Below are positions 7,905-64,000 of a DNA stretch of 64,000 nucleotides, in pieces. The stretch covers positions 310,001-374,000 of the forward strand of contig NW_026782182.1 of assembly GCF_031769215.1 (NCBI RefSeq), given 5' to 3'. Under the pieces are notes generated by a model. The model saw only the letters and a program-made list of their open reading frames with translations. It was not told the origin of the DNA and ran no database searches. Each line of letters begins with the position of its first letter. Positions within the stretch are counted from its first letter, which is position 1. Made by a program: the position numbers and the translations under genes. This DNA is from Ylistrum balloti (Eukaryota).

Positions 7905-10900
7905 ACAGTACACTGACCACACAAACAGTACACTGACCACACAAACAGTACAAAAACTGACCACAGAAACAGTACACTGACCACAGAAACAGTACAAAGA
8001 CTGACCACACAAACAGTACAAAGACTGACCACACAAACAGTACACTGACCACAGAAACAGTACAAATACTGACCACAGTACAAAGACTGACCACACACAC
8101 AGTACATTGACCATAGAAACAGTACACTGACCACACAAACGGTACACTGACCACAGAGACAGTACAAAGACTGACCACATAAACAGAACACTGACCACAG
8201 AAACAGTACACTGACCACACAAACAGTAAACTGACCACACAAACAGTACAAAGACTGGCCACACAAACAGTACACTGACCACATAAACAGTACACTGACC
8301 ACACAAACAGTACAAAGACTGACCACACAAACAGTACAAAGACTGACCACACAAACAGTACACTGACCACACAAACAGTACAAAGACTGACCACACAAAC
8401 AGTAAACTGACCACAGAAACAGTACAAAGACTGGCCACACAAACAGTACACTGACCACATAAACAGTACAAAGACTGACCACACAAACAGTACAAAGACT
8501 GACCACACAAACAGTACACTGACCACACAAACAGTACAAAAACTGACCACACAAACAGTACAAAGACAGACCACACAAACATTACAAAGACTGACCACAC
8601 AAACAGTACAAAGACTGACCACACAAACAGTACACTGACCACACAAACAGTACACTGACCACACAAACAGTACAAAGACTGACCACACAAACAGTACAAA
8701 GACTGACCACACAAACAGTACAAAGACAGACCACACAAACATTACAAAGACTGACCACACAAACAGTACACTGACCACACAAACAGTACAAAGACTGACC
8801 ACACAAACAGTACACTGACCACACAAACAGTACAAAGACTGACCACACAAACAGTACACTGACCACACAAACAGTACAAAGACTGACCACACAAACAGTA
8901 CAAAGACAGACCACACAAACATTACAAAAACTGACCACACAAACAGTACAAAGACTGACCACACAAACAGTACACTGACCACAGAGACAGTACAAAGACT
9001 GACCACATAAACAGAACACTGACCACAGAAACAGTACACTGACCACATAAACAGTAAACTGACCACACAAACAGTACAAAGACTGGCCACACAAACATTA
9101 CAAAGACAGACCACACAAACATTACAAAGACTGACCACACAAACAGTACACTGACCACACAAACAGTACACTGACCACACAAACAGTACAAAGACTAACC
9201 ACACAAACAGTACACTGACCACACAAACAGTACACTGACCACACAAACAGTACAAAGACTAACCACACAAACAGTACACTGACCACACAAACAGTACAAA
9301 GACTGACCACACAAACAGTACACTGACCACACAAACAGTACAAAGACTGACCACACAAACAGTACAAAGACTGACCACACAAACAGTACACTGACCACAC
9401 AAACAGTACAAAGACTGACCACACAAACAGTACAAAGACAGACCACACAAACATTACAAAAACTGACCACACAAACAGTACAAAGACTGACCACACAAAC
9501 ATTACAAAAACTGACCACACAAACAGTACAAAGACTAACCACACAAACAGTACACTGACCACACAAACAGTACAAAGACTGACCACAGAGACAGTACACT
9601 GACCACACAAACATTACAAAGACTGACCACACAAACAGTACACTGACCACACAAACAGTACAAAGACTGACCACACAAACAGTACAAAGACAGACCACAC
9701 AAACATTACAAAAACTGACCACACAAACAGTACAAAGACAGACCACACAAACATTACAAAAACTGACCACACAAACAGTACAAAGACTGACCACACAAAC
9801 AGTACACTGACCACACAAACAGTACAAAGACTAACCACACAAACAGTACACTGACCACACAAACAGTACACTGACCACACAAACAGTACAAAGACTAACC
9901 ACACAAACAGTACACTGACCACACAAACAGTACAAAGACTGACCACCACACAAACAGTACACTGACCACACAAACAGTACAAAGACTGACCACACAAACA
10001 GTACACTGACCACACAAACAGTACAAAGACTGACCACACAAACAGTACAAAGACAGACCACACAAACATTACAAAAACTGACCACACAAACAGTACAAAG
10101 ACTGACCACACAAACAGTACACTGACCAGAGACAGTACAGACTGACCACAAAAAAGAACACTGACCACACAAACAGTACACTGACCACATAAACAGTAAA
10201 CTGACCACACAAACAGTACAAAGACTGGCCACACAAACATTACAAAGACAGACCACACAAACATTACAAAGACTGACCACACAAACAGTACACTGACCAC
10301 ACAAACAGTACACTGACCACACAAACAGTACACTGACCACACAAACAGTACAAAGACTAACCACACAAACAGTACACTGACCACACAAACAGTACACTGA
10401 CCACACAAACAGTACAAAGACTAACCACACAAACAGTACACTGACCACACAAACAGTACAAAGACTGACCACACAAACAGTACACTGACCACAGAGACAG
10501 TACACTGACCACACAAACAGTACACTGACCACACAAACAGTACAAAGACTGACCACACAAACAGTAAACTGACCACACAAACAGTACAAAGACTGGCCAC
10601 ACAAACAGTACACTGACCACATAAACAGTACAAAAACTGACCACACAAACAGTACAAAGACTGACCACACAAACAGTTCAAAGACAGACCACACAAACAT
10701 TACAAAGACTGACCACACAAACAGTACAAAGACTGACCACACAAACAGTACACTGACCACACAAACAGTACACTGACCACACAAACAGTACAAAGACTGA
10801 CCACACAAACATTACAAAAAATGACCACACAAACAGTACAAAGACTGATCACACAAACAGTACACTGACCACACATACAGTACACTGACCACACAAACAG

Positions 10901-11010
10901 TACACTGACCACACAAACAGTTTACTGACCACACAAACAGTTCACTGACCACACAAACAGAACAATGACCACACAAACAGTACAAAAACTGACCACACAA
11001 ACAGTACAAA
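7905..11010. repeat. Mixed 20/24-bp minisatellite (ACAGTACACTGACCACACAA / ACAGTACAAAGACTGACCACACAA)
   Basis: Two interleaved unit lengths differing by an AAAG insertion; source of the many Cys/Val minus-strand ORFs. Confidence 0.95.
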
Positions 11011-13573
11011 GGTACATAGATAGTGGGACATAGGGTTAACGAAAGGTACTTAGAGAGTGGGACATAGGGTTAACCAAATGTACTTAGAGAGTGGAACAAA
11101 GGGTTAACCAAATGCATTTAGAGAGTAGGACATAGGGTTAACCACAGGTACTTAGAGAGTGGGACATATGGTTAACCAAAGGTACTTAGAGAGTGGGACA
11201 TAGGGTTAACCAAACGTACATAGAGAGTGGAACGTAGGGTTAACCTAAGGTACTTAGAGATTGGGACATAGGGTTAACCAATATTTAGAGAGTAGGACAT
11301 AGGGTTAACCAAAGCTACTTAGAGAGTGGGACATAGGGTTAACCAAAGGTACTTAGAGAGTGGGACATAGGGTTAACCAATATTTAGAGAGTAGGACATA
11401 GGGTTAACCACAGGTACTTAGAGAGTGGGACATATGGTTAACCAAAGGTACTTAGAGAGTGGGACATAGGGTTAACCAAACGTACATAGAGAGTGGAACG
11501 TAGGGTTATCCTAAGGTACTTAGAGATTGGGACATAGGGTTAACCAATATTTAGAGAGTAGGACATAGGGTTAACCAAAGCTACTTAGAGAGTGGGACAT
11601 AGGGTTAACCAAAGGTACATAGAGGGTGGGACATAGGGTTAATCAAAGGTACTTAGCGAGTGGGACAAAGGGTTAACCAAAGCTACTTAGAGAGTGGGAC
11701 ATAGGGTTAACCAAAGGTACTTAGAGAGTGGGACATAGGGTTAGCCAAATGTGCTTAGAGAGTGGAACAAATTGTTAACCAAAGGCATTTAGAGAATAGG
11801 ACATAGGGACCAAAGGTACTTAGAGAGTGGGACATATGGTTAACCAAAGGTACATAGAGGGTGGGACATAGGGTTAATCAAAGGTACTTAGCGAGTGGGA
11901 CATATGGTTAACCACAGGTACATAGAGAGTGGTACATAGGATTAACCGAAGGTACTTAGAGGGAGGGATATAGGGTTAACCAAAGGTACTTAGACAGTGG
12001 GTCATATGGTTAACCAATAGTACTAAGAGGGTGGGATATAGGGTTAACCAAAGGTACTTAGACAGTGGGTCATATGGTTAACCAATAGTACTAAGAGGGT
12101 GGGACAAAGGGTTAACCAAAGGTACGAGAGGGTGGTACATAGGGTAAACCAAAGGTTCTTAGAGAATGGTACATAAGGTTAACCAAAGGTACTTAAGGAG
12201 TGGTACATAGGGTTAATCAAAGGTACTTAGAGAGTGGGACATAGGGTTAACCAAAGGTACGTAGAGAGTAGGACACAGGGTTAACCAAATGTACTTAGAC
12301 AGTGGGACATATGGTTAACCAAAAGTACATAGAGGGTGGGACATAGGGTTAATCAAAGGTACTTAGCGAGTGGGACAAAGGGTTAACCAAAGGTACGAGA
12401 GAGTGGAACATAGGGTTAATCAAAGGTACTTAGAGAGTAGGACACAGGGTTAACCAAATGTACTTAGAGAGTGGGACATAGGGTTAACCAAAGGTACATA
12501 GAGAGTGGGACAAAGGGTTAGCCAAATGAACTTAGACTGTGGGTCATATGGTTAACCAAAGGTACATAGAGAGTGGGACATAGGGTTAACCAATGGCATT
12601 TAGAGAGTAGGACATAAGGTTAACCAAAGGTACTTAGAGAGTGGGACATAGGGTTAACCAATGGCATTTAGAGAGTAGGACATAGGGTTAACCAAATGTA
12701 CGAGAGAGTGGGACATAGGGTTAACCAAAGGTACTTAGAGAGTGGGACAAAGGGGTAACCAAAGGTACGAGAGAGTGGAACATAGGGTTAACCAAAGGTA
12801 CATAGAGATTGGGACATAGGGTAACCAATGGCATTTAGAGAGTAGGACATAGGTTTAACCAAAGGTACGAGAGAGTGGGACATAGGGTTAACCAAATGTA
12901 CTTAGAGAGTGGGACAAAGGGTTAGCCAAATGAACTTAGACAGTGAGTCATATGGTTACCAAAGATACTAAGATAGTGGGACATAGGGTTAACCAAAGGT
13001 ACTTAGAGAGCGGGACAAAGGGTTAACCAAAGGTACTTAGAGAGTGGGACATAGGGTTAACCAAAATTTTCTTAGAGAGCGGGACAAAAGGTTAACCAAA
13101 GGTTCTTTGAGAGTAGGACACAGGGTTAACCAAATGTACGAGAGAGTAGGTCATAGGGTTAACCAAAGGTACATAGAGGGTGGGATATAGGATTAACCAA
13201 ACGTACTAAAAATAGAGACATAGGGTTAACTAAAGGTACTTAAGGTGGAGCCATAGGGTTAACCAAAGGTACTTAAAGGCTGGGACATAGGGTTAACCAA
13301 AGGTACTTAAAGGGTGGGACATAGGGTTAACCAAAGGTACTTAGAGGGTGGGATATAGGGTTAACTAAAGGTACTTAGAGAGTGGGACATATGGTTAACC
13401 AAAGGTACTTAAAGGGTGGGACATAGGGTTAACCAAATGTACTGAGAGGGTGGGACATAGGGTTTACCAAAGGTACTTAGAGAGTGGGACATAGGGTTAA
13501 CCAAAGGTACTTAAAGGGTGGGACATAGGGTTAACCAAATGTACTGAGAGAGTGGGACATAGGGTTAACCAAA
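11007..13573. repeat. 34-bp minisatellite (AGAGAGTGGGACATAGGGTTAACCAAAGGTACTT), about 75 copies
   Basis: Period 34 (11047 to 11081); internal palindrome GGTTAACC; multi-unit block duplication 11121-11340 vs about 11387-11610. Confidence 0.95.
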
Positions 13574-21200: not shown

Positions 21201-24200
21201 TTTGCCAATTACAACATTTTGATTGTAACTGTAGGGTGAGGAACAAGCTATCATTAAAAATCTCCTTTGGCTTTTGAACATGATCTCTGCTCTTATCGTA
21301 TTTTTGTGTGTACATGTAAAATGCCTGATGTGAGTTTATTAATCTGAGAATAATGTGTGCTTGCCTTAAAATAAACTTAACATTTCATTAGCAGGCATTT
21401 AATATTACCATGGGCCATAACACAAAAAAACCTGTACATATTGACCTCATTACCATGGTAACCAGTTTCGTTGAAATGGGTTCACATGTTTAGGCAGAAA
21501 GACAAACAAGCTGATTCCAGAATACTCCCCCCACCACTAACTTAGTTCAGTAAGAAACAGCAATCTATAATTGGTATTATGATACTGGTGATATCACATC
21601 AGTATGGACTGTGCAATTTTTTCCTCCCCGGAGAATTTGGTTGCTTTTTTAACAAGGTCACTGTAACAAGTGAGTGGCTGGTTTCAGACAATCATTTGTT
21701 TGCCAATACAAAAGTAAATATGCTGTACTTAATGAGGAATCATACCAGCCTTTAAAACGGTTCAGTGTTATTATCGATTTCCTACTCAGTGGTTCTGAAA
21801 TCAATGGTCAGGTTATAATGTACCTGGTGATATAGTTTGACATTGTTAGATCTATCCTTAGCAACAATGGCCGACAACAACAGGTCTATTAAACATACAG
21901 ATTGTGCATACCAATGCTTTCTTTGTATCTGTATTGATGTCACTGTAATGCTACCAGTGGTGACATAGCTGGTAAATTGTAGCCATCATGGTGTCCATTT
22001 CTGTAATGACCGACAAACAGCCATATTACTGTTTTCCTCTGAAGATACTTTAACTGATTAAACTGTACTATTTTGTAATTAGTGTTTTCCAGACATTCCT
22101 ATTTGCTTGTGCTTGAATTTTCTGTAGACTTAAAATGAATAAGGCACTGAAACCGAGGTTTATGGTATCTATTTTTAGAAACAAACGTGACCAATGTTGC
22201 TATAGACAAAAAAAAAATCGTACAACTACTTGATTTAACCATTGTTGAGATATGAGTATATTTTATGTTGAAAGACACAAACCTGACTGAGTTTGATGTT
22301 GAGAGAAACAAACCTGACTGAGTTTGATGTTGAGAGAAACAAACCTTACTGTGTTTGATGCTGGGAGAAACAAGCCTGACTGAGTTTGATGTTGAGAGAA
22401 ACATACCTGACTGAATTTAATGTTGAGAGAAACAAGCCTGACTGAATTTAATGTTGGGAGAAACATACCTGACTGAATTTGATGCAGAAAGAAACAAACC
22501 TGACTGAGTTTGATGCTGGGAGCAACAAACCTGACTGAGTTTGATGCTGAGAGAAACCAACCTGACTGAGTTTGATGTTGAGAGAAACAAACCTTACTGT
22601 GTTTGATGCTGGGAGAAACAATCCTGACTGAGTTTGATGTTGAGAGAAACAAGCCTGACTGAATTTAATGCTGAGAGAAACAATCCTGACTTAGTTTGGC
22701 ACTGGGAGCAACAAACCTGACTGAGTTTGATGCTGGGAGAAACAAACCTGACTGAGTTTGATGTTGAGAGAAACATACCTGACTGAATTTAATGCTGAGA
22801 GAAACAATCCTGACTGAGTTTGATGTTGAGAGAAACAATCCTGACTGAATTTAATGCTGAGAGAAACAATCCTGACTGAGTTTGATGTTGAGAGAAACAT
22901 ACCTGACTGAATTTAATGCTGAGAGAAACAAGCCTGACTGAGTTTGATGTTGAGAGAAACATACCTGACTGAATTTAATGCTGAGAGAAACAATCCTGAC
23001 TGAGTTTGATGTTGAGAAAAACAAACCTGACTGAGTTTGATGCTGGGAGCAACAAACCTGACTGAGTTTGATGCTGGGAGCAACAAACCTGACTGAGTTT
23101 GATGTTGAGAGAAACAAACCTTACTGTGTTTGATGCTGGGAGAAACAATCCTGACTGAGTTTGATGTTGAGAGAAACAAACCTGACTGAATTTAATGCTG
23201 AGAGAAACAATCCTGACTGAATTTAATGCTGAGAGAAACAATCCTGACTGAGTTTGATGTTGAGAGAAACAATCCTGACTGAATTTAATGCTGAGAGAAA
23301 CAATCCTGACTGAGTTTGATGTTGAGAGAAACATACCTGACTGAATTTAATGCTGAGAGAAACAAGCCTGACTGAGTTTGATGTTGAGAGAAACATACCT
23401 GACTGAATTTAATGCTGAGAGAAACAATCCTGACTGAGTTTGATGTTGAGAGAAACAAACCTGACTGAGTTTGATGCTGGGAGAAACAAACCTGACTGAG
23501 TTTGATATTGTGAGAAACAAACCTGACTGAGTTTGATGCTAAGAGAAGCAAACCTGACTGAGTTTGATGCTGGGAGCAACAAACCTGACTGAGTTTGATG
23601 CTGAGAGAAACATACCTGACTGAGTTTGATGCTGGGAGCAACAAACCTGACTGAGTTTGATGCTGGGAGCAACAAACCTGACTGAGTTTGATGCTGTGAG
23701 CAACAAACCTGACTGAGTTTGATGCTGGGAACAACAAAATCCTAACTGAGGGAGACGGAATTGGCTATGATTGTATTGAGATATGTTAATTTATGCGATT
23801 TAGATAAAGCAGGTGTGTGAGAAGGATATGTTAATCAGTGGTGCGTTTCTAAATTCAGGTTCCTGGCTCGACAATGACATTTATCAGTGTTTATAATGCA
23901 ATTAACTTCTGATCTGAAAATCTTCATTGTTTCTATTGTTGTGGCACCTGAAAAATGTCAGGGGTGCTGAATTCACAACTACTAGGTGGACACTAAAAAA
24001 TCTTACCCTGTCAGATTTTGACAGCAGCTAGAGAGCTTAGCTTGACAAGATGTTTTGTTTGGTTTATCACTTTTCTTGAAAATCACGGGTAATGTTGAAA
24101 TTAGGTCACCTTGTAGTAGCTGATGACAACGTGAATGATAAACCGCAAACCGATACACTGCTATCTCAACTGTTAACAGCTAACCAGTTCACTGATATCT

Positions 24201-32241: not shown

Positions 32242-34106
32242 ACAAAAACTTCACGACATGTTAGTGCTACAAAAACTTCATGACATGTTGGTGCTACAAA
32301 AACTTCATGACATGTTAGTACTACAAAAACTTCATGACATGTTAGTGCTACAAAAACTTCATGACATGTTGGTGCTACAAAAACTTCATGACATGTTGGT
32401 ACTACAAAAACTTCATGACATGTTAGTGCTACAAAAGCTTCATGACATGTTGGTGCTACAAAAACTTCATGACAAGTTAGTACTACAAAACCTTCATGAC
32501 ATGTTGGTGCTACAAAAACTTCTTGACATGTTGGTGCTACAAAAACTTCATGACATGTTGGTACTACAAAAATTTCATGACATGTTGGTGCTACAAAAAC
32601 TTCATGACATGTTAGTACTACAAAAACTTCATGACATGTTGGTACTACAAAAACTTCATGACATGTTAGTGCTACAAAAACTTCATGACATGTTGGTGCT
32701 ACAAAAACTTCATGACATGTTGGTGCTACAAAAACTTCATGACATGTTGGTGCTACAAAAACATCATGACATGTTGGTGCTACAAAAACTTCATGACATG
32801 TTGGTGCTACAAAAACTTCGTGACATGTTAGTTCTACAAAAACATCGTGACATGTTAGTACTACAAAAACTTCGTGACATGTTAGTACTACAAAAACTTC
32901 ACGACATGTTAGTACTACAAAAACTTCATGACATGTTGGTACTACAAAAACTTCATGACATGTTAGTGCTACAAAAACTTCATGACATGTTGGTGCTACA
33001 AAAACTTCATGACATGTTAGTGCTACAAAAACTTCGTGACATGTTAGTTCTACAAAAACTTCATGACATGTTGGTGCTACAAAAACTTCGTGACATGTTA
33101 GTTCTACAAAAACATCGTGACATGTTAGTACTACAAAAACTTCGTGACATGTTAGTACTACAAAAACTTCATGACATGTTGGTGCTACAAAAACTTCATG
33201 ACATGTTGGTGCTACAAAAACTTCATGACATGTTGGTGCTACAAAAACATCATGACATGTTGGTGCTACAAAAACTTCATGACATGTTGGTGCTACAAAA
33301 ACTTCGTGACATGTTAGTTCTACAAAAACATCGTGACATGTTAGTACTACAAAAACTTCGTGACATGTTAGTACTACAAAAACTTCGTGACATGTTAGTA
33401 CTACAAAAACTTCACGACATGTTAGTACTACAAAAACTTCATGACATGTTGGTACTACAAAAACTTCATGACATGTTAGTGCTACAAAAACTTCATGACA
33501 TGTTGGTGCTACAAAAACTTCATGACATGTTAGTGCTACAAAAACTTCGTGACATGTTAGTTCTACAAAAACTTCATGACATGTTGGTGCTACAAAAACT
33601 TCGTGACATGTTAGTTCTACAAAAACATCGTGACATGTTAGTACTACAAAAACTTCGTGACATGTTAGTACTACAAAAACTTCGTGACATGTTAGTACTA
33701 CAAAAACTTCACGACATGTTAGTACTACAAAAACTTCATGACATGTTGGTACTACAAAAACTTCACGACATGTTAGTGCTACAAAAACTTCATGACATGT
33801 TGGTGCTACAAAAACTTCATGACATGTTAGTGCTACAAAAACTTCGTGACATGTTAGTTCTACAAAAACTTCATGACATGTTAGTGCTACAAAAACTTCG
33901 TGACATGTTAGTTCTACAAAAACTTCATGACATGTTAGTGCTACAAAAACTTCATGACATGTTAGTACTACAAAAACTTCGTGACATGTTAGTTCTACAA
34001 AAACTTCATGACATGTTAGTGCTACAAAAACTTCATGACATGTTAGTACTACAAAAACTTCGTGACATGTTAGTACTACAAAAACTTCATGACATGTTGG
34101 TGCTAC
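32242..34106. repeat. 27-bp minisatellite (ATGTTAGTGCTACAAAAACTTCATGAC), about 69 copies, no indels seen
   Basis: The uninterrupted MLVLQKLHD repeat ORF 32258..34144 confirms constant unit length. Confidence 0.97.
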
Positions 34107-34680
34107 GTTTCTTCCTTATCAATAAGACAATCAGTACTTCATGAATGACAGCTAACTGACACAGAAGGTCGAGATCAGTAATAGAAATGGACACAAGATT
34201 GTGAAGTATCAAAAACCAACATTAAATACAATAAGCAGTGCTAAAACAGTAGTCCAAGGGAGATAATTCTTGTTGAAATGGCAAAATATGACCGTCTGAG
34301 TCGATTTCATTCAACTTCGTTTCAAAGGGATGTATTTATGACAAAAATAAAAGACACGGCTTTTTCTGATGAAGGAATACTAATTCATTTTGACATAAAT
34401 GATAGGTAGATCAAGGAAATTCAGTATTGACTGAGGTAACTCTGTAGCACCAATCCTTATCCACATCCATATCTGTCCAGTTTCGTACAGAAGCCTCCAG
34501 CTTGTTACAAAGCAATCTCAAGTGTAAAATTGTTACCTAAAACTTGTAGACTTTTAAAACAATTGACAGAGAAAGACTGGCATATTCCAGTGAGAAACGT
34601 CTCCGGGGAAAAGAAATGTCTTATTTGTGAATTTATAGGAAAGTTTCGGTCAATGTGGCCACAAATAGGGATCATCATAC

Positions 34681-40832: not shown

Positions 40833-41102
40833 ATTAGATTGATGGCTTTTAGAAGCTTGAAGATTTACTGTCAGAATCCTATCATATCTCTGCTAGCAGT
40901 CATTGGAACAATATAGATTACTGAGTACGTAACGTGGAAACAGTATTGGAGGGTTAAGAATCATAGCCTGGACACATATCGAGTTCATTGTAAATAAGTA
41001 TGAAGTGTTTTACTATTTTACATTTAGCCATACACACAAGGACAGACAGTTTTCTCTCTTCTCAAGTCTGGAGGGAAAACACGATGAAACATAACCCATA
41101 GT

Positions 41103-44100
41103 CAGTGGCGTAGCGTCCGTGCATGCTTGCATGCTCAAGCATGCAAGAATAAAATTCGAGAAAACATGTTTTCTTTTTCTTGTTTATTAATCTATTTCCA
41201 TAATGTGCATGATTCTTTTCTCGCGATTTGTTTTATATACCGTTGCGACGATATATTCCGGAAACTTTCCAGGTTTCAAGTTTACTTTTATAATACCAGA
41301 CACACTTCCGTAACCAAGTTAACAAGCGCTTACATTTTCGAGATCATGTCGAAAAAGATAGAAGATTTTTTCAAAAAGGTTCCAAAGTCTGATGTTGAAG
41401 AGTCTTCGTCAAATATAGCCGAATCGCTTCCCGATGACAAATCAGACCCAGTCAAACTTCAGCAAGAACTAAAAGAAGGACCATGTTGTGTTGACCTAGC
41501 TTGCGAACAGTTAACAGATCAAATAAAGAAGAAAGTTTTGTTAGAGTCCTGGGATCAGTGGCTCGGTTTTCCCTTTCCACAAAGGTATTGGTTATTCGCA
41601 AATGAGAGTTTTAGAGTTCAGAAGGTTCCGGGTTCGAGCCCGGTCTTTCCCCATTCCTATAGTATTTCACAATTACTGTAAATAATGGCCTAGACATATC
41701 TAATATCATCACAAAGAAATAAATCGTCAACTAATAGAATTGTGTTACAAGTGTCTATACTATAACATCTATATTAGAGATATTACAGATAGGAGGCAAA
41801 ATGCGCATACACACGTTACACTAAAAACACATAATCTTATGCGTGTTTGTATTAGTGTTCTGTGCCTCATATCGGTATGTTTGTGGTTGAAATGTAATAT
41901 ACGGCTGTTTTCTACATTTTGTTTCAAATAATCAATTTAACAGCATTCGCCATTTGTTAAATATGCCAACTTGTTTCTTTTTCGTCTTATGAACAATTTG
42001 GCTCATATAAGAATACTTCTTGGAATTAAGAGAACAAAAATATGCAGCATTGAACTCAGGATCTTCTGAACACTAGACCGTCAGTTTAAGCGATTAAGCC
42101 GTCTGGTCACCGGCAATCCCAGTTCATCGACAGTTTCGTTACCATTACCCTAAGACATATTGTTTCTGTTATTCAAGGGTATTGTTAGCTCTTTTTCCAC
42201 TACCCTATGCATAATAAAAGATAACGATGATTTTATGAGCTTTTGCATTCATTAAGGATCATAAAGTACAACAAAATATGTGTCTAAACTACATGTATTG
42301 TAACAATACAGTTTCCTCATACTTATGGACGCTTATCGATAAAAAAATCAATGCTCTTTTTGTGTAGCTTTTTAAAAATATGATTTCAATAGATAAATAG
42401 AAAGGGTGAATTTAGATTTTAAATTCAGGAAAAAACATATCTAAACTATATGGATTTTGAAAAGGGCTGTAAGGATTTTGAAAAGGGCTTTACGTACGAG
42501 TTGAAACTAAAATTCAGCAGAAAAGTGAGTTAACGTATATAGAACCCGTCTGATGAAACATATATGGTTCATGATATAATACATGCTACTTCCGTACTAT
42601 ATATGCAATTTTAAAAGCGTTTTTCAAATAGATGATTTTACGTTGTTACATCATGTATTTGTACATGAAAATCGCTCAATAATTCTACATGCCACTTGCA
42701 TAAAGATTTGTGAGCATATCGAGTTAATCAACTAGTTTGATAAGTTTCATATTGCATGCTACATAGTCACTAGTGTAAGATTCTATTTATCACATACTAG
42801 GTATTAATGAGAATATAAGCTAATTCTCAGTGAATGTGATTTCATATTGATGATGTCGTATTCGGAATGTCCCTTTTGACTTATGCTCGGTACTTTTGTG
42901 TTTACATGTACTTACATACCAGTGTCTTTCTATTTCAGAAAAGTACATGGCCGCGAGAGAAGATTCAACTACACCTGGTTGAAAGAACATCCATGGATGC
43001 GCTATTCCGTCTCCAAGGATTCAGTTTATTGCGTGCACTGCTTCATATTTGGAGATAAGTCTGGAAAGGAGAGGCCATTCAGATCTCCAGTAGATGACTG
43101 GATCAACCTTTCCACTTACGTCAAGCGTCATGAAGCAGAGAACTCACCTCACCATGGCTGTCAGATTTCGGCGGATCATTTTATTGATATTATGACTGGA
43201 AAGGATGACTCAATTGTATCAAAACTCGACTCTTCTCACAAAGCAGATGTCAACAAAAACAGACACATATTGAAAAAGATAATCGAGGTGTTGCTGCTGT
43301 GTGGTCGGCAAAACATTGCAATCAGGGGGCACACTGAAGAAAAGAGCAATTTTTGGGCAATTTTGAATGTTCTGTGTGCAGATGATCTTGTGGTCCAAGA
43401 TCACATCTCCAACCCTAACGCGCAGTTAAAGTACACATCTCCAGATATCCAGAACGAATTAATTGAAATACTGGCGTCTCATGTCACCAAAGCAATTACA
43501 CTTCGAATTAAGGAGTCACCGTACATCGCCGTTCTTGCAGACGAATGTACAGACAAATCTACCAAAGAGCAATTGTCTGTCTGTGTGCGTTACCTTGATA
43601 CGACAGAAAACGGTGAAATATGTGTTAAAGAAGACTTTTTGTGTTTCATACATGTTAAGAGCATTAAGGGGGAGGACTTGGCTCCTGAAATCATACAAGC
43701 TCTTCGGAACTTTGGCCTGGACATTGCAAAATTAAGGGCTCAGGGGTATGATGGGGCATCGAACATGTCTGGAAAATTTCGCGGTGTACAGGCAATTATA
43801 AGACAAACAGCTCCGCATGCCACCTATGTGCATTGCAAGTCGCACCAGTTAAATCTTGCCCTTGTTCATTCCTCTTCCCAAGCCTGTGTACGGACCATCA
43901 TGGGAACGGTGCATGATATCGCTTTTGCTTTCGATTATTCAGCAAAGCGCTTGCAGTACTTCAAAAATGAGCTCCTCGGTGACCAAAACGCCAAAGATCA
44001 AATGGAGTCTAGGACCAAACTGAGAACACTGTGCGAAACGAGATGGTCTAGTCGTGCTGATGCCTTACACACGTTCAAGGCTTCATTCAGTGTCATCGTT

Positions 44101-45312
44101 AGTAGTTTGGAGGCGTTGAAGAACGACGGAGATGACAAAGCGGGTGGAAGATTGGCAGCAATTTTGAGGTTCGAGTTTATCATTGGGCTGGTCGTTACTG
44201 AACACATCCTCAGCGGCACTGTTGCGCTTTCCAACCATCTACAGTCAGTAGACTGCGACCTTATGGAAGCCGCCACTGAATGCAGGACTGTAATAAGTAT
44301 GCTCAGAAATGAACGAGCGGATGATGATGTTTGGAATGAGCTGTTTGACCAGGCTGTCGGCGTAGCCGCAGAATACGGTATTCAACCTTGCGTCCCGAGA
44401 CAAACTGGACGACAGCAGCAACGTGCAAACTACCAGATACCCGACCCAAGGCAATATTGGAAAGTTAGTCTGTTCTTGGTTTTTCTTGACCATTTGATCA
44501 CAGAGCTGGAGACACGGCTATTGGATAGCGAGGGTAGATTCAAAGCAGAGACGCTCTTCCCACGTAATCTTCAGCAACTCACTGACGATATTGTCAACGC
44601 AGTGTTTGATGCCTTTGAAGTAGACCTGTCCGACAAGGCGTCTTACCTGACGGAAGTTCGGCGATGGAGAACCAGATGGGTAGCCATTCCACTAAAGGAC
44701 CGACCAAGAGGTCTCTGCGAAATCCTGGATCGGACAAGTCGAGATCTATACCCAAACATTAGAAATATCTTTAGTGTACTTCTCTCAATGCCGACATCGA
44801 CTGCATCAGCCGAACGATCTTTCAGCTCGATGAGACGAATTAAGACCTACCTCCGGACAACAATGACGACAGAACGGCTGTCTGCTCTTGCTGTCCTCCA
44901 TACCCATCGGGACACTCAGGTTGACATAGATACTGTCATTGATGACTTCGCGGCAGCAAAGTCTCGAAAGTTGCAATTCGTTTAAACCAATACCGGAGGA
45001 TCAGAATGATGTCTTTTTGTGGTAGATAACCACTTTAAAATTTTTCGTAACTTTTTGATGTTTCATGGTACAATCTTCCCTTAAATCTACGTTTTAGATT
45101 GGTATTGTGTTGTATATTTCTTTATCTCATCTTTTGTATCGTAAAGTTGTTTTTGACAAATGTGAAAAGTGAGATTAAAATCTTTATAATCTTTATATAT
45201 GCTGGTCTTTTTAATAATTTCGAATGATTACAATGCTGTAATCAAAATACCTTCAGCTGCCGCCCCTGCACCCCCAAGCATGCAATTGAATGAAGGCCTC
45301 GCTACGCCACTG
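41103..45312 (+). mobile_element. Autonomous hAT-superfamily DNA transposon, 4210 bp, 13-bp perfect TIRs, 5-bp TSD (hAT5-like)
   Basis: TIRs CAGTGGCGTAGCG (41103-41115) and CGCTACGCCACTG (45300-45312); flanks ATAGT (41098-41102) and ATAGT (45313-45317); internal intact transposase. Confidence 0.93.
41346..44985 (+). CDS. hAT transposase, join(41346..41584,42939..44985), 761 aa; TTF-type zinc finger + DUF4371 + DDE/RNaseH + hAT C-terminal dimerisation domain (PRKRIR/THAP12- and ZMYM1-like family)
   Basis: Phase-2 intron AG|GTATTG...TTTCAG|A joins FPFPQR-KVHGRERRFNYTWLKEHPW..YSVSKDSVYCVHC; motifs LADECTD, QGYDGASNMSG, HCKSHQLNL, CETRW, SAERSFSSMRRIKTYLRTTM..ERLSALA; no stops or frameshifts. 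Confidence 0.92.
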
Positions 45313-46169
45313 ATAGTACTGCTGTCGTTATGAAAAAATGTGCATGTTCTTATTTCCTGCCGGAAGCTTCAAAATGTACCAAAGGCCAGGCATATTTGAA
45401 TATTTGACATTTGAATCACCATTCGGAATATCCCTCTTACATGGCTCCTGGTATTTCTCGAAGAACGGTGTTTTATAGTGATCAGTCCTGTCTAGTTGCT
45501 TACTTCATACACGAGAGGTAATTCTACACATAATTGTATGTATATTTATTGAGAATGTTATAGTTGTAATTGTTGATATTGATGTGTACTGAAGTCAACA
45601 GGTTACCGTGATGTATCAATTAAGTTTGGAATTAAATTGATTTCTTACCTATTTCAACTACGTAAAAAAGGATTCACAGCCACATTGACGATTCCTGTTT
45701 GAACATACAATGTACATGTACCAATTAACTCTTGCTTTTACAGGACCGAATGATTTACCTGATCGGTATTAATTCAGTATTATGAAATCACATACATTCC
45801 TTGGGGGTTAAGTTTCGTGGTTAAAAAGTCATTATTTCGTAGATATTTGATAGCGGGGATATATTTATCTCAATAAATGTATTCACTTTTAATATACTAA
45901 TGATAACAGTTCATGGAAATGAAATCGTGGTTAAGGGAATCCACGAAATCTACGAAAATTGAAAACGCACACAAATTAATAAGTTCACGGTAACACTGTG
46001 GTAGGTACATATAAGCATTAACGATAATGCTATGAGAGAGAAGGGGTCTTTCAGTTGGCAAGTGAATTTCACATTTTAATATTCGGGAACATTCCATGGA
46101 CGCCATTTGATCTAAATTGAGAAGAAGAAAAAAAACTCGTGCGATATGAAGTTTGGATGTTGCGTTATT

Positions 46170-57915: not shown

Positions 57916-60900
57916 GGTAAACAATGATTACTGTAAGTTATCGTGAAAGGTAAACAATGATCACTGTAAGTTATCGTGGTAAACAATGATTACTGTAAGT
58001 TATCGTGGTAAACAATGATTACTGTAAGTTATCGTGAAATGTAAACAATGATTACTGTAAGTTATCGTGAAATGTAAACAATGATCATTTTAAGTTATCG
58101 TGGTAAACAATGATCACTGTCAGTTATCGTGGTAAACAATGGTCACTGTAAGTTATCGTGAAAGGTAAACAATGATTACAGTAAGTTATCGTGGTAAACA
58201 ATTATTACAGTAAGTTATTGTGGTAAACAATGATTACTGTAAGTTATCGTGAAATGTAAACAATGGTCACTGTAAGTTATCGTGGTAAACAATGATCACT
58301 GTAAGTTATCGTGGTAAACAATGGTCACTGTAAGTTATCGTGGTAAACAATGATTACTGTAAGTTATCGTGGTAAACAATGATTACTGTAAGTTATCGTG
58401 AAATGTAAACAATGGTCACTGTAAGTTATCGTGGTAAACAATGATCACTGTAAGTTATCGTGGTAAACAATGGTCACTGTAAGTTATCGTGGTAAACAAT
58501 GATTGTAAGTTATCGTGGTAAACAAACTGTAATTAACAGTAAGTTATTGTGGTAAACAATGATTACTGTAAGTTATCGTGGTAAACAATGATCACTGTAA
58601 GTTATCGTGGTAAACAATGATCACTGTAAGTTATCGTGGTAAACAATGATCACTGTAAGTTATCGTGGTAAACAATGATTACTGTAAGTTATCGTGGTAA
58701 ACAATGATTACTGTAAGTTATCGTGGTAAACAATGATTACTGTAAGTTATCGTGGTAAACAATGATCACTGTAAGTTATCGTGGTAAACAATGATCACTG
58801 TAAGTTATCGTGGTAAACAATGATCACTGTAAGTTATCGTGGACAATGGTCACTGTAAACAATGGTCACTGTAAGTTATCGTGGTAAACAATGATCACTG
58901 TAAGTTATCGTGGTAAACAATGATCACTGTAAGTTATCGTGGTAAACAATGATTACAGTAAGTTATCGTGGTAAACAATTATTACTGTAAGTTATCGTGG
59001 TAAACAATGATTACTGTAAGTTATCGTGGTAAACAATGACAGTAAGTTATCGTGGTAAACAATTATTACTGTAAGTTATCGTGGTAAACAATGATTACTG
59101 TAAGTTATCGTGTAAACAATGGTCACTGTAAGTTATCGTGGTAAACAATGATTACTGTAAGTTATCGTGGTAAACAATGGTCACTGTAAGTTATCGTGGT
59201 AAACTGTAAGTTATCGTGGTAAACAATGATACTGTAAGTTATCGTGAAATGTAAACAAACTGTAAGTTATCGTGGTAAACAATGATTACTGTAAGTTATC
59301 GTGGTAAACAATGATCACTGTAAGTTATCGTGGTAAACAATGATTACTATAAGTTATCGTGAAATGTAAACAATGGTCACTGTAAGTTATCGTGGTAAAC
59401 AATGATCACTGTAAGTTATCGTGGTAAACAATGATTACTGTAAGTTATCGTGGTAAACAATGGTCACTGTAAGTTATCGTGAAAGGTAAATAATGATTAC
59501 TGTAAGTTATCGTGGTAAACAATGGTCACTGTAAGTTATCGTGATAAACAATGGTCACTGTAAGTTATCGTGGTAAACAATGGTCACTGTAAGTTATCGT
59601 GGTAAACAATGATTACTCTAAGTTATCGTGGTAAACAATTATTACAGTAAGTTATTGTGGTAAACAATGATTACTGTAAGTTATCGTGGTAAACAATGAT
59701 TACAGTAAGTTATCGTGGTAAACAATTATTACAGTAAGTTATTGTGGTAAACAATGATTACTGTAAGTTATCGTGAAATGTAAACAATGATCACTGTAAG
59801 TTATCGTGGTAAACAATGATCACTGTAAGTTATCGTGGTAAACAATGGTCACTGTAAGTTATCGTGGTAAACAATTATTACAGTAAGTTATTGTGGTAAA
59901 CAATGATTACTGTAAGTTATCGTGAAATGTAAACAATGGTCACTGTAAGTTATCGTGGTAAACAATGATTACTGTAAGTTATCGTGGTAAACAATGATCA
60001 CTGTAAGTTATCGTGGTAAACAATGATTACTGTAAGTTATCGTGAAATGTAAACAATGGTCACTGTAAGTTATCGTGGTAAACAATGATCACTGTAAGTT
60101 ATCGTGGTAAACAATGGTCACTGTAAGTTATCGTGGTAAACAATGATTACTGTAAGTTATCGTGGTAAACAATGATTACTGTAAGTTATCGTGGTAAACA
60201 ATGATCACTGTAAGTTATCGTGGTAAACAATGATTACTGTAAGTTATCGTGGTAAACAATGATCACTGTAAGTTATCGTGGTAAACAATGGTCACTGTAA
60301 GTTATCGTGGTAAACAATGATTACTGTAAGTTATCGTGGTAAACAATTATTACAGTAAGTTATTGTGGTAAACAATGATTACTGTAAGTTATCGTGAAAT
60401 GTAAACAATGATCACTGTAAGTTATCGTGGTAAACAATGATTACTGTAAGTTATCGTGGTAAACAATGATCACTGTAAGTTATCGTGGTAAACAATGATT
60501 ACTGTAAGTTATCGTGAAATGTAAACAATGGTCACTGTAAGTTATCGTGGTAAACAATGATCACTGTAAGTTATCGTGGTAAACAATGATCACTGTAAGT
60601 TATCGTGGTAAACAATGATTACAGTAAGTTATCGTGGTAAACAATTATTACAGTAAGTTATCGTGGTAAACAATGATTACTGTAAGTTATCGTGAAATGT
60701 AAACAATGATCACTGTAAGTTATCGTGGTAAACAATGATTACTGTAAGTTATCGTGGTAAACAATGATCACTGTAAGTTATCGTGGTAAACAATGATTAC
60801 TGTAAGTTATCGTGAAATGTAAACAATGGTCACTGTAAGTTATCGTGGTAAACAATGATTACTGTAAGTTATCGTGGTAAACAATGATTACTGTAAGTTA

Positions 60901-61372
60901 TCGTGGTAAACAATGATCACTGTAAGTTATCGTGGTAAACAATGGTCACTGTAAGTTATCGTGGTAAACAATGATTACAGTAAGTTATCGTGGTAAACAA
61001 TTATTACAGTAAGTTATTGTGGTAAACAATGATTACTGTAAGTTATCGTGAAATGTAAACAATGGTCACTGTAAGTTATCGTGGTAAACAATGATTACTG
61101 TAAGTTATCGTGGTAAACAATGATCACTGTAAGTTATCGTGGTAAACAATGATTACTGTAAGTTATCGTGAAATGTAAACAATGGCCACTGTAAGTTATC
61201 GTGGTAAACAATGATCACTGTAAGTTATCGTGAAATGTAAACAATGATTACTGTAAGTTATCGTGAAATGTAAACAATGATTACTGTAAGTTATCGTGAA
61301 AGGTAAACAATGATCACTGTAAGTTATCGTGGTAAACAATGATCACTGTAAGTTATTGTGAAAGATAAACAA
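57916..61372. repeat. 29-bp minisatellite (GTAAACAATGATTACTGTAAGTTATCGTG) with a 33-bp (+AAAT) variant, more than 110 copies
   Basis: Seen directly; largest array in the window. Confidence 0.97.
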
Positions 61373-62749
61373 TAATAAAATGTTATAGGTATGACATGGC
61401 ATTATACCTAAGTTCGAGTACAAAATACACTGTCCAACACTTTACCTGCCTAACAATATCTGATCTAATGAAAAGATTTTAGAATCCAGCAAAATAGTCA
61501 TAGTAATAAAAAGGAAATACTATTGCTAAGCAACGCTTTTAAAGATATCGAGCGGGTAGTTATAATCAAATATCAACACACATTATTTATATTACTTCCA
61601 ACATACCCTAGTTAGTCTGTATGACGTGCAGCGGACACGTGTTTGTTCTTCAGTGAGAAAGTCTAAAAACATATAACCAAATATAACAGAAAGAACCGAG
61701 AACACACATTTAGATTTTTCCTTTTAAGGATTCCATAACAAGACAACTTGTCAAACCAAGATGAAATAATTAAAAAAAGATGGCATTTTTGACAAAACAT
61801 TGTCCTACTTGCTCCTTTAATCAACAGGGTAAGTATTGAACATTCATCACAAGTGGCAACACTATAAAGATAAACGTCAACATGCGGGTCATCGTGTTCA
61901 TAGTCGATATGAATGACATTCAGCAGCAGCACCATACAGTTTATGTTGTTAGTGAGTATAACCAACGAGTAGAACGCCTGCTCTAACGGAAACTACAGAG
62001 ACAGGAGTGTGTATACCATGAACAGATTGTATCCATTCTAATTAGCGTCGCTAAGTAAGCTCAGTCTAATATCACATACAAATACAAATGTCAACGTGAA
62101 TGTCTTCCTATCAGACAAATATTTCTGAATATACTACAACGTATACATAACTCGTCACACTGCAGCAATGTGCATCGATGTATTGTTTCTATCGCAGCAG
62201 TCCCGAGCCGCCGAAACTAGCCCAGTATTGGTACGATAATTACCGATAATTGCCGAGGTGGCCTCGGTTTTTGACGTGCCAGACGAATGAGATGTGAAAC
62301 GGATCTGACAGACAATATGGCAAAGCTCTTCCCTAAACATTGTACATACAAATCATCAACATAGATCCTGTTGTTACTGCGGCTTCAGCTGCTGTTGGTA
62401 AAGACTACGTATAGACATGTGCTGGGTAGGATATAATAATATGAACAGAATCTTGTGTCTATATCACTGGCATCATACTACTACAGTTCCTCAATGTTTG
62501 CCTATTTATTCCCACAAATGACCCATGTATGAACTTCCTCACTAATTGTATGACACCGTTAGGTATAATCCACGTTTGTGCCATACCATACTTTGTTTAT
62601 TATGCCTCTTCAATGCCTGTTTTTTCTCTATAGATATTGAACATCTTTCAAAATCGGTGTAACAACATCACACAAAAGTTGTAATAACGTCTTTCCAACA
62701 ACAATGATTCCAGGTATCATTGGTTAACCACCAAACTGTCTTAAAGTTT

Positions 62750-64000
62750 CACTTGTCACACAGGGCTGACTTAAACAGTGGGGGCACTTGTCACACAGGG
62801 CTGACTTAAACAGTGGGGGCACTTGTCACACAGGGCTGACTTAACCAGTGGGGGCACTTGTCACACAGGGCTGACTTAAACAGTGGAGGCACTTGTCACA
62901 CAGGGCTGACTTAAACAGTGGAGGCACTTGTCACACAGGGCTGACTTAACCAGTGGGGGCACTTGTCACACAGGGCTGACTTAAACAGTGGAGTGCACAT
63001 GTCACACAGGGCTGACTAAAACAGTGAGGGCACTTGTCACACAAGGCTGACTTAAACAGTGGGGGCAACTGTCAAACAAGACTGACTTTAACAGTGGGGG
63101 CACTTGTCACACAGGGCTGACTAAAACATTTGAGGACATTTGTCACACAGGGCTGACTAAAACAGTGGGGATGTTTGTCACACAGGGCTGACTAAAACAG
63201 TTGAGGACATTTGTCACACAGGGCTGACTAAAACAGTAGGGATATTTGTCACACAGGGCTGACTAAAACAGTTGAGGACATTTGTCACACAGGGCTGACT
63301 AAAACAGTAGGGATATTGTCACACGGGGCTGACTGACACTTGTCACACAGGGCTGAATAAAACAGTTGAGGACATTTGTCACACAGGGCTGACTAAAACA
63401 GTAGGGATATTGTCACACGGGGATGACTGACACTTGTCACACAGGGCTGAATAAAACAGTTGAGGACATTTGTCACACAGGGCTGACTAAAACAGTAGGG
63501 ATATTGTCACACGGGGCTGACTAAAACAGTTGAGGACATTTGTCACACAGGGCTGACTAAAACAGTAGGGATATTGTCACACGGGGCTGACTAAAACAGT
63601 TGAGGACATTTGTCACACAGGGCTGACTAAAACAGTAGGGATATTTGTCACACGGGGCTGACTGAAACAGTGGGGATGTTTGTCACACAGGGCTGACTAA
63701 AACAGTTGAGGACATTTGTCACACAGGGCTGACTAAAACAGTGGGGATGTTTGTCACACAGGGCTGACTGAAACAGTTGAGGACATTTGTCACACAGGGC
63801 TGACTAAAACAGTAGGGATATTGTCACACGGGGCTGACTAAAACAGTTGAGGACATTTGTCACACAGGCCTGACTAAAACAGTAGGGATATTTGTCACAA
63901 GGGGCTGACTGAAACAGTGGGGATGTTTGTCACACAGGGCTGACTAAAACAGTTGAGGACATTTGTCACACAGGGCTGACTAAAACAGTGGGGATGTTTG
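62750..64000. repeat. About 35-bp minisatellite (TGTCACACAGGGCTGACTTAAACAGTGGGGGCACT) shifting to an alternating two-unit (~70 bp) higher-order repeat; runs off the right edge
   Basis: Period 35 (62761 to 62796); after about 63110 units alternate ..TTGAGGACATT.. and ..TAGGGATAT(T)../..TGGGGATGTT.. Confidence 0.93.

What the first reader, a model, noticed from the sequence alone, without database searches (positions are those of the whole stretch)
41098..45317. Intact, recently inserted hAT transposon that made a 5-bp (not 8-bp) target-site duplication
Seen: perfect 13-bp TIRs starting with CAG, an unbroken 761-aa spliced transposase retaining the catalytic D/D/E motifs, CxxH, TRW and the dimerisation domain, and identical flanks ATAGT|element|ATAGT. 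The 8-bp flanks (CCCATAGT vs ATAGTACT) do not match. Established: canonical hATs (Ac, hobo, Hermes, Tol2) make 8-bp TSDs; a minor group with 5-bp TSDs (hAT5) is, as I recall, known mainly from cnidarian repeat libraries. Inference: this is a potentially active member of an atypical, little-studied hAT lineage with altered cut spacing, of mechanistic interest and a possible gene-transfer tool. Caveat: ATAGT begins with A and ends with T, so the data also fit a 14-bp TIR (TCAGTGG...) with a 3-bp TAG duplication.
Basis: partly seen in the sequence, partly recalled or inferred. Interest (0 to 1): 0.8.

Follow-up and report, generated by a model that had tools for sequence, protein, structure and literature searches.

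The report
Young scallop hAT5 transposon, 5-bp duplications
This is an intact, very young cut-and-paste DNA transposon of the scallop Ylistrum balloti that really does duplicate 5 rather than 8 bases when it inserts, but that habit defines the 'hAT5' group, described in 2007, so it is a new member of a known kind.

Summary
Observation confirmed. Window 41103-45312 is a 4210-bp element with perfect 13-bp inverted ends (CAGTGGCGTAGCG), flanked by ATAGT on both sides. It carries an unbroken two-exon, 761-codon hAT transposase gene.

The genome (Ylistrum balloti, 648 Mb) holds about 13 full-length copies differing at 2-22 positions per 4.2 kb. It also holds deletion derivatives of 146-1196 bp.
- Of 19 copies with both ends assembled, 18 have an exact 5-bp direct repeat, each a different sequence and none extendable to 6 bp.
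- Eleven uninterrupted satellite monomers next to one copy carry the 5 bases once.
- One 314-bp derivative sits at five loci, each with its own duplication, which shows recent mobilisation in trans.

Relatives in three other bivalves, a coral, a sponge and two unnamed assemblies share the end motif CAG[G/T]GG[C/T]GTA and 5-bp duplications. A cypriniform-fish relative with related ends makes 8-bp ones.

hATs with 5-bp duplications were named hAT5 by Kapitonov and Jurka in 2007. Other first readers of this scan also noted 5-bp hAT-like elements elsewhere in this genome; I did not check those notes. Verdict: real, probably active, new member of a known kind, moderate interest.

The parts
41098..41102 (+). 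left copy of the 5-bp target-site duplication (ATAGT)
41103..41115 (+). left terminal inverted repeat CAGTGGCGTAGCG
   Evidence: The boundary falls exactly at the terminal C, shown by the empty site of another copy.
41119..41146 (+). left subterminal motif cluster: two direct and one inverted copy of (T)TGCATGC, with GCATGC at 41121, 41129 and 41139. Candidate transposase-binding sites.
   Evidence: The same layout, with lineage-specific motifs, is seen at this end of eight of the nine related elements printed (the own-genome paralogous family C694 lacks it there).
41346..41584 (+). exon 1 (aa 1-79 plus two bases of codon 80); the first 47 residues are predicted disordered
41585..42938 (+). 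GT-AG intron. It contains a 21-bp tandem unit (42446-42487), of which this copy has one unit fewer than the other copies.
42939..44985 (+). exon 2 (aa 80-761 plus stop)
43030..43152 (+). zinc finger of TTF/BED type (C111, C114, H144, H151); probable DNA-binding domain
   Evidence: These residues are invariant or nearly invariant in 24 relatives.
43207..43785 (+). DUF4371 region, the N-terminal half of the RNase-H-like catalytic core, with D281 (43540-43542) and D351 (43750-43752)
43834..43845 (+). C379-x-x-H382 motif
44044..44046 (+). W449 of the CETRW motif, aligned with the CPTRW tryptophan of Hermes
44659..44910 (+). hAT C-terminal dimerisation domain with the catalytic E705 (44812-44814)
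45276..45283 (+). right subterminal copy of the TTGCATGC motif (AAGCATGC on the + strand)
45300..45312 (+). right terminal inverted repeat CGCTACGCCACTG
45313..45317 (+). right copy of the 5-bp target-site duplication (ATAGT)

Best explanation
Window 41103-45312 is one copy of a young, autonomous cut-and-paste DNA transposon of the hAT superfamily. It belongs to the 5-bp-duplication type that Repbase calls hAT5, and the host is the saucer scallop Ylistrum balloti.

Shown:
- A two-exon gene encodes a 761-aa transposase. It has an N-terminal zinc finger, an RNase-H-like DDE core (D281, D351, E705) interrupted by an all-helical insertion domain that carries W449, and a C-terminal hAT dimerisation domain.
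- The family has 13-bp inverted ends and exact 5-bp target duplications.
- It has multiplied recently, and it has mobilised its own internal-deletion derivatives.

Inferred from established hAT (Hermes) biochemistry:
- The zinc finger binds the subterminal TTGCATGC repeats.
- A transposase dimer or oligomer pairs the two ends and excises the element, leaving hairpins on the flanking DNA.
- The freed 3'-OH ends attack the two target strands 5 bp apart instead of 8 bp. Gap repair then yields the 5-bp duplication.
- The shorter stagger must reflect a different spacing of the two active sites relative to the bent target DNA. Which residues cause it is not known.

Whether this particular copy is active now is also not known. 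It has an intact frame, one private change (Q405H) and a 21-bp intron deletion.
For: Anatomy.

Protein family and fold:
- Pfam DUF4371 (6.5e-23) and Dimer_Tnp_hAT (7e-11).
- A profile of 24 relatives hits Hermes transposase at E=1e-5. It aligns E705 with the Glu of Hermes SERTFS and W449 with the Trp of CPTRW.
- AlphaFold model with mean pLDDT 80. The 12 best PDB matches are all Hermes, E about 1e-8 to 1e-6.

Family within the genome:
- 27-28 matches to each end in the own genome.
- 12 full-length copies differ at 2-22 positions per 4.2 kb, mostly private changes.
- The 761-codon frame reads through in 7 copies scanned by script (window, C904, C706, C238a, C238b, C158, C472). An eighth copy, C112, encodes the 761-aa NCBI model P0001.

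Duplication length:
- 18 of 19 two-ended copies have repeats of exactly 5 bp with varied sequence.
- 11 paralogous empty satellite monomers carry the 5 bases once.
- For the copy on C1027, empty sites on C937 and C913 lose homology exactly at the element tip.

Recent mobilisation: five loci carry the same 314-bp derivative (0-1 differences among the four 314-bp copies; the fifth is 315 bp) and two loci carry the same 164-bp derivative, each with its own 5-bp duplication.

Lineage-wide trait: elements in Mya, Mytilus, Mercenaria, the coral Oculina, the sponge Sycon, two unnamed assemblies and a second scallop family all combine ends of the type CAG[G/T]GG[C/T]GTA with 5-bp duplications.

Prior description of hAT5: PMC9004415 and PMC12730594.
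Against: - No direct evidence of transcription, excision or new insertion.
- No empty allele of the window's own site exists in this assembly.
- One copy (C112) has non-matching flanks (ATAAA / TACTA).
- D281 and D351 are assigned from motif conservation and their position on predicted strands, not from a residue-level superposition on Hermes.
Confidence: 0.9

Rival explanations
1. The true ends are 14 bp (TCAGTGG...CCACTGA) and the element duplicates only 3 bp (TAG).
For: In the window copy the inverted repeat can be extended by one base to 14 nt, because ATAGT starts with A and ends with T (pair I13).
Against: Across 18 copies the base next to the left end is T, G, A or C, and the base next to the right end also varies. 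The extra pair is therefore a coincidence of this one site. The empty site of the C1027 copy loses homology exactly at the 13-bp end. Satellite monomers show all 5 bases present once.
Confidence: 0.01
2. It is a canonical 8-bp hAT whose duplication has decayed, or the 5-bp match is chance.
For: Canonical hATs make 8-bp duplications (established knowledge). A related fish family does so as well.
Against: The copies are 99.5-99.95% identical, so the flanks have had no time to decay. Eighteen independent sites match for exactly 5 bp and never 6 or more. The chance of a match is about 0.0013 per site.
Confidence: 0.01
3. The family is real and young but no longer mobile, either silenced or lacking a functional source copy. 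The window copy would then be a dead, if undecayed, relic.
For: There are no expression or excision data. The window copy has a private Q405H change. Several copies are broken: C146 has a stop at codon 290, C102 has a 65-bp deletion, and C759 has a 2-bp deletion.
Against: Eight copies keep the full frame (seven by script; C112 via the NCBI model). Derivatives with identical breakpoints sit at several loci with 0-1 differences. One insertion is absent from near-identical duplicate or haplotype sequence. All of this points to activity within a very recent period.
Confidence: 0.3
4. The multiple identical copies are segmental duplications or assembly artefacts rather than transposition products.
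For: Some copies end at contig ends (C1290, C759, C472, C1027). One copy (C580) is riddled with about 60 small deletions typical of unpolished sequence.
Against: Homology between copies stops exactly at the inverted ends. Every copy has different flanks and its own 5-bp duplication. The flanks of the window copy are unique in the genome close to the site.
Confidence: 0.01

Closest known systems
hAT5 group of hAT transposons (Kapitonov and Jurka, Repbase Reports 2007; Putnam et al. 2007; RepeatMasker/Dfam class DNA/hAT-hAT5)
   Same: An autonomous element encoding a hAT transposase that makes 5-bp target-site duplications, found in invertebrates. The group is described as unusual for exactly this feature (PMC9004415, PMC12730594). 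The hAT5 label has been used for Lymnaea repeats (PMC6128900) and Hydra repeats (PMC12220107).
   Different: This is a new family from a scallop, with several intact copies that are close to identical. Co-clustering with the reference hAT5 transposases (hAT5-3_NV, hAT-13_HM and others in the tree of PMC12730594) could not be tested. I found no paper that describes the conserved end motif and subterminal motif layout reported here.
Hermes (Musca domestica), the structurally solved hAT transposase
   Same: Same overall fold (the 12 best Foldseek matches). The C-terminal catalytic Glu motif and the TRW motif align. The ends are short inverted repeats beginning CAG.
   Different: About 14% sequence identity. 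Hermes makes 8-bp duplications and lacks the DUF4371-type sequence signature. The zinc finger here is of TTF type.
Animal hAT lineages with DUF4371 (Tip100, Blackjack and Buster-like elements, and the host genes that NCBI uses for naming: ZMYM1, THAP12/P52rIPK)
   Same: Domain set DUF4371 plus a FAM200-ZBED5 RNase-like region plus Dimer_Tnp_hAT. In the published tree, hAT5 lies next to Blackjack and hAT6.
   Different: Those are 8-bp elements or immobile domesticated genes (established knowledge). This one is multi-copy, has inverted ends and makes 5-bp duplications. The NCBI names 'ZMYM1-like' and '52 kDa repressor-like' are best-hit labels, not orthology.
Related family in cypriniform fish (Triplophysa dalaica, Phoxinus phoxinus; loci L096, L098)
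   Same: 36-38% protein identity to the coral member. Related ends (CACGGCCGTAGCC) and the same subterminal layout of two direct and one inverted motif followed by an A/T-rich stretch.
   Different: It makes 8-bp duplications (AGTCTAGG and ATTAGTCC). On the unrooted tree it forms a single branch among 5-bp lineages.

Membership tests
hAT superfamily | Transposase with the C-terminal hAT dimerisation domain (PF05699) | tested here: met
   E=7e-11, above the curated cut-off. The same result was obtained for P0001.
hAT superfamily | RNase-H-like DDE core interrupted by an all-helical insertion domain, with a Hermes-like fold | tested here: met
   AlphaFold model with pLDDT 80. Foldseek ranks 1-12 are all Hermes at probability 1.00. 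A family profile hits Hermes at E=1e-5.
hAT superfamily | Conserved D, D, E, CxxH and RW motifs | tested here: met
   D281, D351, E705, C379, H382 and R448 are invariant, and W449 is nearly invariant, in 24 relatives. All are present in the window copy. E705 and W449 align to Hermes. The two Asp residues are assigned by motif and strand position only.
hAT superfamily | Short terminal inverted repeats beginning CAG or TAG | tested here: met
   13-bp perfect ends, CAGTGGCGTAGCG.
canonical hAT (Ac, hobo, Hermes, Tol2, Buster) | 8-bp target-site duplication | tested here: not met
   Exactly 5 bp in 18 of 19 copies, confirmed by empty sites.
hAT5 (Repbase) | 5-bp target-site duplication | tested here: met
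   The same holds in seven elements of other assemblies and in a second own-genome family.
hAT5 (Repbase) | Autonomous copies encoding a hAT transposase | tested here: met
hAT5 (Repbase) | Transposase clusters with the reference hAT5 sequences (hAT5-3_NV, hAT-13_HM, hAT-31_HM, hAT-33_HM) | not testable with these tools
Only the published tree topology could be read. No Nematostella or Hydra protein was among the 120 best hits of either protein search.
Transib/RAG-like transposons (also 5-bp duplications) | Transib/RAG1-type core rather than a hAT core | tested here: not met
   Pfam finds only hAT-type domains. RAG1 structures rank far below Hermes, with E around 0.05 and TM-score about 0.17.

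The most novel reading that the evidence does not exclude
The scallop family belongs to an old lineage, present in sponge, coral and bivalves, that keeps one end motif (CAG[G/T]GG[C/T]GTA), one subterminal layout and a 5-bp cut spacing. A fish branch with the same terminal layout makes 8-bp duplications. If so, cut spacing has switched within a single transposase family at roughly 35% protein identity. A near-identical, intact scallop copy and the fish element would then form a natural pair for mapping, by domain swaps and structures, what sets the stagger in hAT and RAG-like DDE enzymes. It might also yield a mollusc gene-transfer vector.
Probability: 0.45. Interest if true: 0.5.

Novelty: new member of a known kind. 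Interest (0 to 1): 0.3.

Why it matters
The 5-bp duplication is real, but it is the published hallmark of hAT5, so the finding does not change what is known about hAT elements. Its value is practical.
- It identifies a hAT5 family with several intact, almost identical copies and fresh non-autonomous derivatives. To my knowledge no member of this group has been tested biochemically, so this is a good candidate for a first activity assay.
- It gives conserved end and subterminal motifs across animal phyla.
- It identifies a related 8-bp lineage that could be used to find what determines cut spacing.
- An active mollusc transposon could also be useful for transgenesis in bivalves.

Tried and rejected
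- A single-sequence search of exon 2 against PDB sequences gave only weak, spurious centrin hits. A first attempt was out of frame. The profile search and the fold search then found Hermes.
- No empty allele of the window site exists in this assembly. The right flank is unique, and the left flank shows only an old repeat 270 bp or more from the site.
- The C1290 copy lies in a high-copy repeat of about 370 bp, but its right junction is beyond the contig end, so those paralogues say nothing about duplication length.
- The Pecten maximus relative (L094) has degenerate ends, and no duplication could be called.
- Two coral proteins (P0045, P0068) had no contig on record.
- A literature search combining the hAT-hAT5 label with bivalve terms returned nothing relevant.
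An outgroup from the same genome, and therefore a rooted direction of the 5/8-bp change, could not be obtained.
- Target preference is weak: a palindromic tendency R-Y-N-R-Y, with purine at position 4 in 15 of 18 sites (uncorrected p=0.0075). I do not treat this as established.
- The spliced window protein was joined only inside a local script, to count codons and compare it with P0001. It was not sent to any search or fold. Exons were searched by reference. The database protein P0001, from the C112 copy and differing at 6 residues, stood in for alignment and folding.
- The large representative-protein search and the complex prediction were not used, because nothing rested on them.
Full report
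**What is in the window.** The sequence reads ...AACCC ATAGT | CAGTGGCGTAGCG ... CGCTACGCCACTG | ATAGT ACTGC.... The element spans 41103-45312 (4210 bp). It has perfect 13-bp inverted ends, and ATAGT lies at 41098-41102 and 45313-45317. The 8-bp flanks do not match.

**The gene.**
- A 700-codon open frame (42883-44985) carries Pfam DUF4371 (6.5e-23) and the hAT dimerisation domain (7e-11).
- A protein search identified the host as the scallop Ylistrum balloti. It returned a 761-aa NCBI model, P0001, named 'zinc finger MYM-type protein 1-like', that comes from another copy of the same element.
- Mapping P0001 onto the window gives exon 1 at 41346-41584, a GT-AG intron at 41585-42938 and exon 2 at 42939-44985.
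- That is 762 codons with only the final stop.
- I joined the exons only in a local script, for this count. The joined protein was not sent to any search. P0001 (6 residues different) stood in for alignment and folding.

**The protein is a hAT transposase.**
- In 24 relatives, D281, D351, E705, C379, H382 and R448 are invariant.
- In the same relatives, W449 and the zinc-finger cysteines C111 and C114 are nearly invariant, and H144 and H151 are invariant.
- All of these residues are present in the window copy.
- The family profile hits Hermes transposase at E=1e-5. It aligns E705 with the catalytic Glu motif and W449 with the CPTRW tryptophan.
- An AlphaFold model (mean pLDDT 80) has Hermes as its 12 best PDB matches.

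**The family in this genome.**
- Each end finds 27-28 places in the 648-Mb assembly.
- Twelve full-length copies differ from one another at 2-22 positions per 4.2 kb, mostly by private changes.
- The window copy has 5 private substitutions (one of them is Q405H) and lacks one 21-bp intron repeat unit.
- The 761-codon frame reads through in seven copies scanned by script (window, C904, C706, C238a, C238b, C158, C472). The C112 copy encodes the 761-aa NCBI model.
- C146, C102 and C759 are broken.
- C580 shows about 60 small deletions that look like unpolished assembly.
- There are also internal-deletion derivatives of 1196, about 314 (five loci), 284, 164 (two loci) and 146 bp.
- The four 314-bp copies share one breakpoint and differ at 0-1 positions; the fifth copy is 315 bp. 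The derivative was therefore moved in trans several times after it arose.

**The duplication is 5 bp.**
- Of 19 copies with both ends assembled, 18 have a direct repeat of exactly 5 bp, never 6 or more.
- The 18 repeats have 18 different sequences. The chance of a match is about 0.0013 per site.
- The bases next to the ends vary.
- The one exception, C112 (ATAAA versus TACTA), also has 6 substitutions clustered in its last 420 bp. It is probably a recombinant or a mis-join.
- One 314-bp copy (C320) sits in a 177-bp satellite. The filled monomer reads TTTCCC-GTAAT|element|GTAAT-AAGGAAATGG. Eleven neighbouring monomers read TTTCCC-GTGAT-AAGGAAATGG, with the 5 bases present once.
- For the copy at the start of contig C1027, near-identical sequence on C937 and C913 lacks the element. 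Homology is lost exactly at the terminal base.
- No empty allele of the window's own site is in the assembly.

**Relatives elsewhere.** All of the following elements have ends beginning CAG[G/T]GG[C/T]GTA together with 5-bp duplications:

| Source | Locus |
|---|---|
| Mya arenaria | L089 |
| Mytilus edulis | L090 |
| Mercenaria mercenaria | L095 |
| Coral Oculina patagonica | L091 |
| Sponge Sycon ciliatum | L097 |
| Unnamed assembly | L092 |
| Unnamed assembly | L093 |
| Second scallop family, about 80% identical in DNA | C694 |

- Most also share a terminal layout. At the 5' end there are two direct and one inverted copy of a lineage-specific 7-8-mer, 18-45 nt from the tip, followed by an A/T-rich stretch. 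At the 3' end there is one copy about 30 nt from the tip. The 5' end of the C694 copy lacks this layout.
- In the scallop the motif is TTGCATGC. Six of the window's nine GCATGC sites lie in the element, four of them subterminal.
- I infer that these motifs are the binding sites of the zinc finger.

**A related 8-bp branch.**
- A family in the fishes Triplophysa and Phoxinus has related ends (CACGGCCGTAGCC) and the same terminal layout. Its protein is 36-38% identical to the coral member.
- It has 8-bp duplications at both loci examined (AGTCTAGG and ATTAGTCC).
- On a 38-protein maximum-likelihood tree, one change of state separates the fish branch from all eight 5-bp lineages.
- The midpoint root would make the fish state a reversal. 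Without an outgroup the direction is open.
- I could not fetch outgroup families from the scallop genome.

**What is already known.**
- hAT families with 5-bp duplications were named hAT5 by Kapitonov and Jurka (Repbase Reports 2007) and reported with the Nematostella genome. hAT6 and hAT7 exist too.
- The published tree places hAT5 beside Blackjack and hAT6 (PMC9004415, PMC12730594).
- The hAT5 label has been applied to repeats of Lymnaea and Hydra.
- The defining feature of the group is met here. Clustering with the Repbase references could not be tested.
- Two other first-reader notes in this scan mention 5-bp hAT-like elements elsewhere in this genome. I did not check them.

**Verdict.** The observation and the interpretation hold. 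The element is a young, probably still mobile hAT5-type transposon. It is a new member of a known kind. Its main use is as an experimental handle on cut spacing and as a possible bivalve vector.

Noticed in passing
window 1-34959 and 57916-63994: The window is packed with long minisatellite arrays with periods of 20-57 bp and up to 140 copies. Examples are 4643-6985, 7912-11011, 11007-13573, 22261-23738 and 57916-61360. The 628-codon open frame at 32258-34144 is an artefact of a 27-bp repeat present 69 times, not a gene.
   Followed up: partly
G000:C112:19557-23787 (loci L011, L038, L065): This is the only copy with non-matching flanks (ATAAA / TACTA). It has 6 substitutions clustered in its last 420 bp, so it is probably an inter-copy recombinant or an assembly mis-join. 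It is the copy from which the NCBI model protein P0001 was predicted.
   Followed up: partly
G000:C580:1114772-1118594 (L060): This copy has perfect ends and a 5-bp duplication, but about 60 small internal deletions and few substitutions. That pattern looks like unpolished long-read sequence rather than biology.
   Followed up: partly
L096:4412-8949 (Triplophysa dalaica) and L098:2610-8566 (Phoxinus phoxinus): The related 8-bp fish element is 87-96% identical in DNA between a loach and a minnow, and the proteins are almost identical on the tree. This suggests horizontal transfer, or very recent spread, among cypriniform fishes.
   Followed up: partly
proteins P0019 and P0047: Two proteins labelled as coming from a Sedimenticola sp. 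metagenome-assembled genome are 54% and 45% identical to this animal transposase. They sit on contigs of about 3.5 kb. This is probably animal (host) DNA binned into a bacterial genome.
   Followed up: no
L019/L044 (G000:C320, around 1257036-1257349): A 314-bp derivative lies inside a tandem satellite with a period of about 177 bp. The satellite's neighbouring monomers served as empty sites.
   Followed up: yes
L001/L081-L086 (G000:C1290:13740-14099 and paralogues): The C1290 copy is inserted into a repeat of about 370 bp. At least 40 other copies of that repeat, 91-93% identical, are present in the genome.
   Followed up: no
G000:C937:565406-573115, C913:2079-2683, C1027:146-750: The sequence flanking the C1027 copy occurs at 99-100% identity twice on C937, about 7 kb apart, and once on C913, without the element. 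This is a local duplication, or haplotype contigs, with presence/absence of the transposon.
   Followed up: partly
G000: C478:221198, C459:520660, C233:1523777, C98:1607140, C991:78344, C40:116555: Further long open frames (657-716 codons) with DUF4371 lie elsewhere in the scallop genome. They are probably other hAT families. Their ends and duplication lengths were not examined because no more DNA could be fetched.
   Followed up: no
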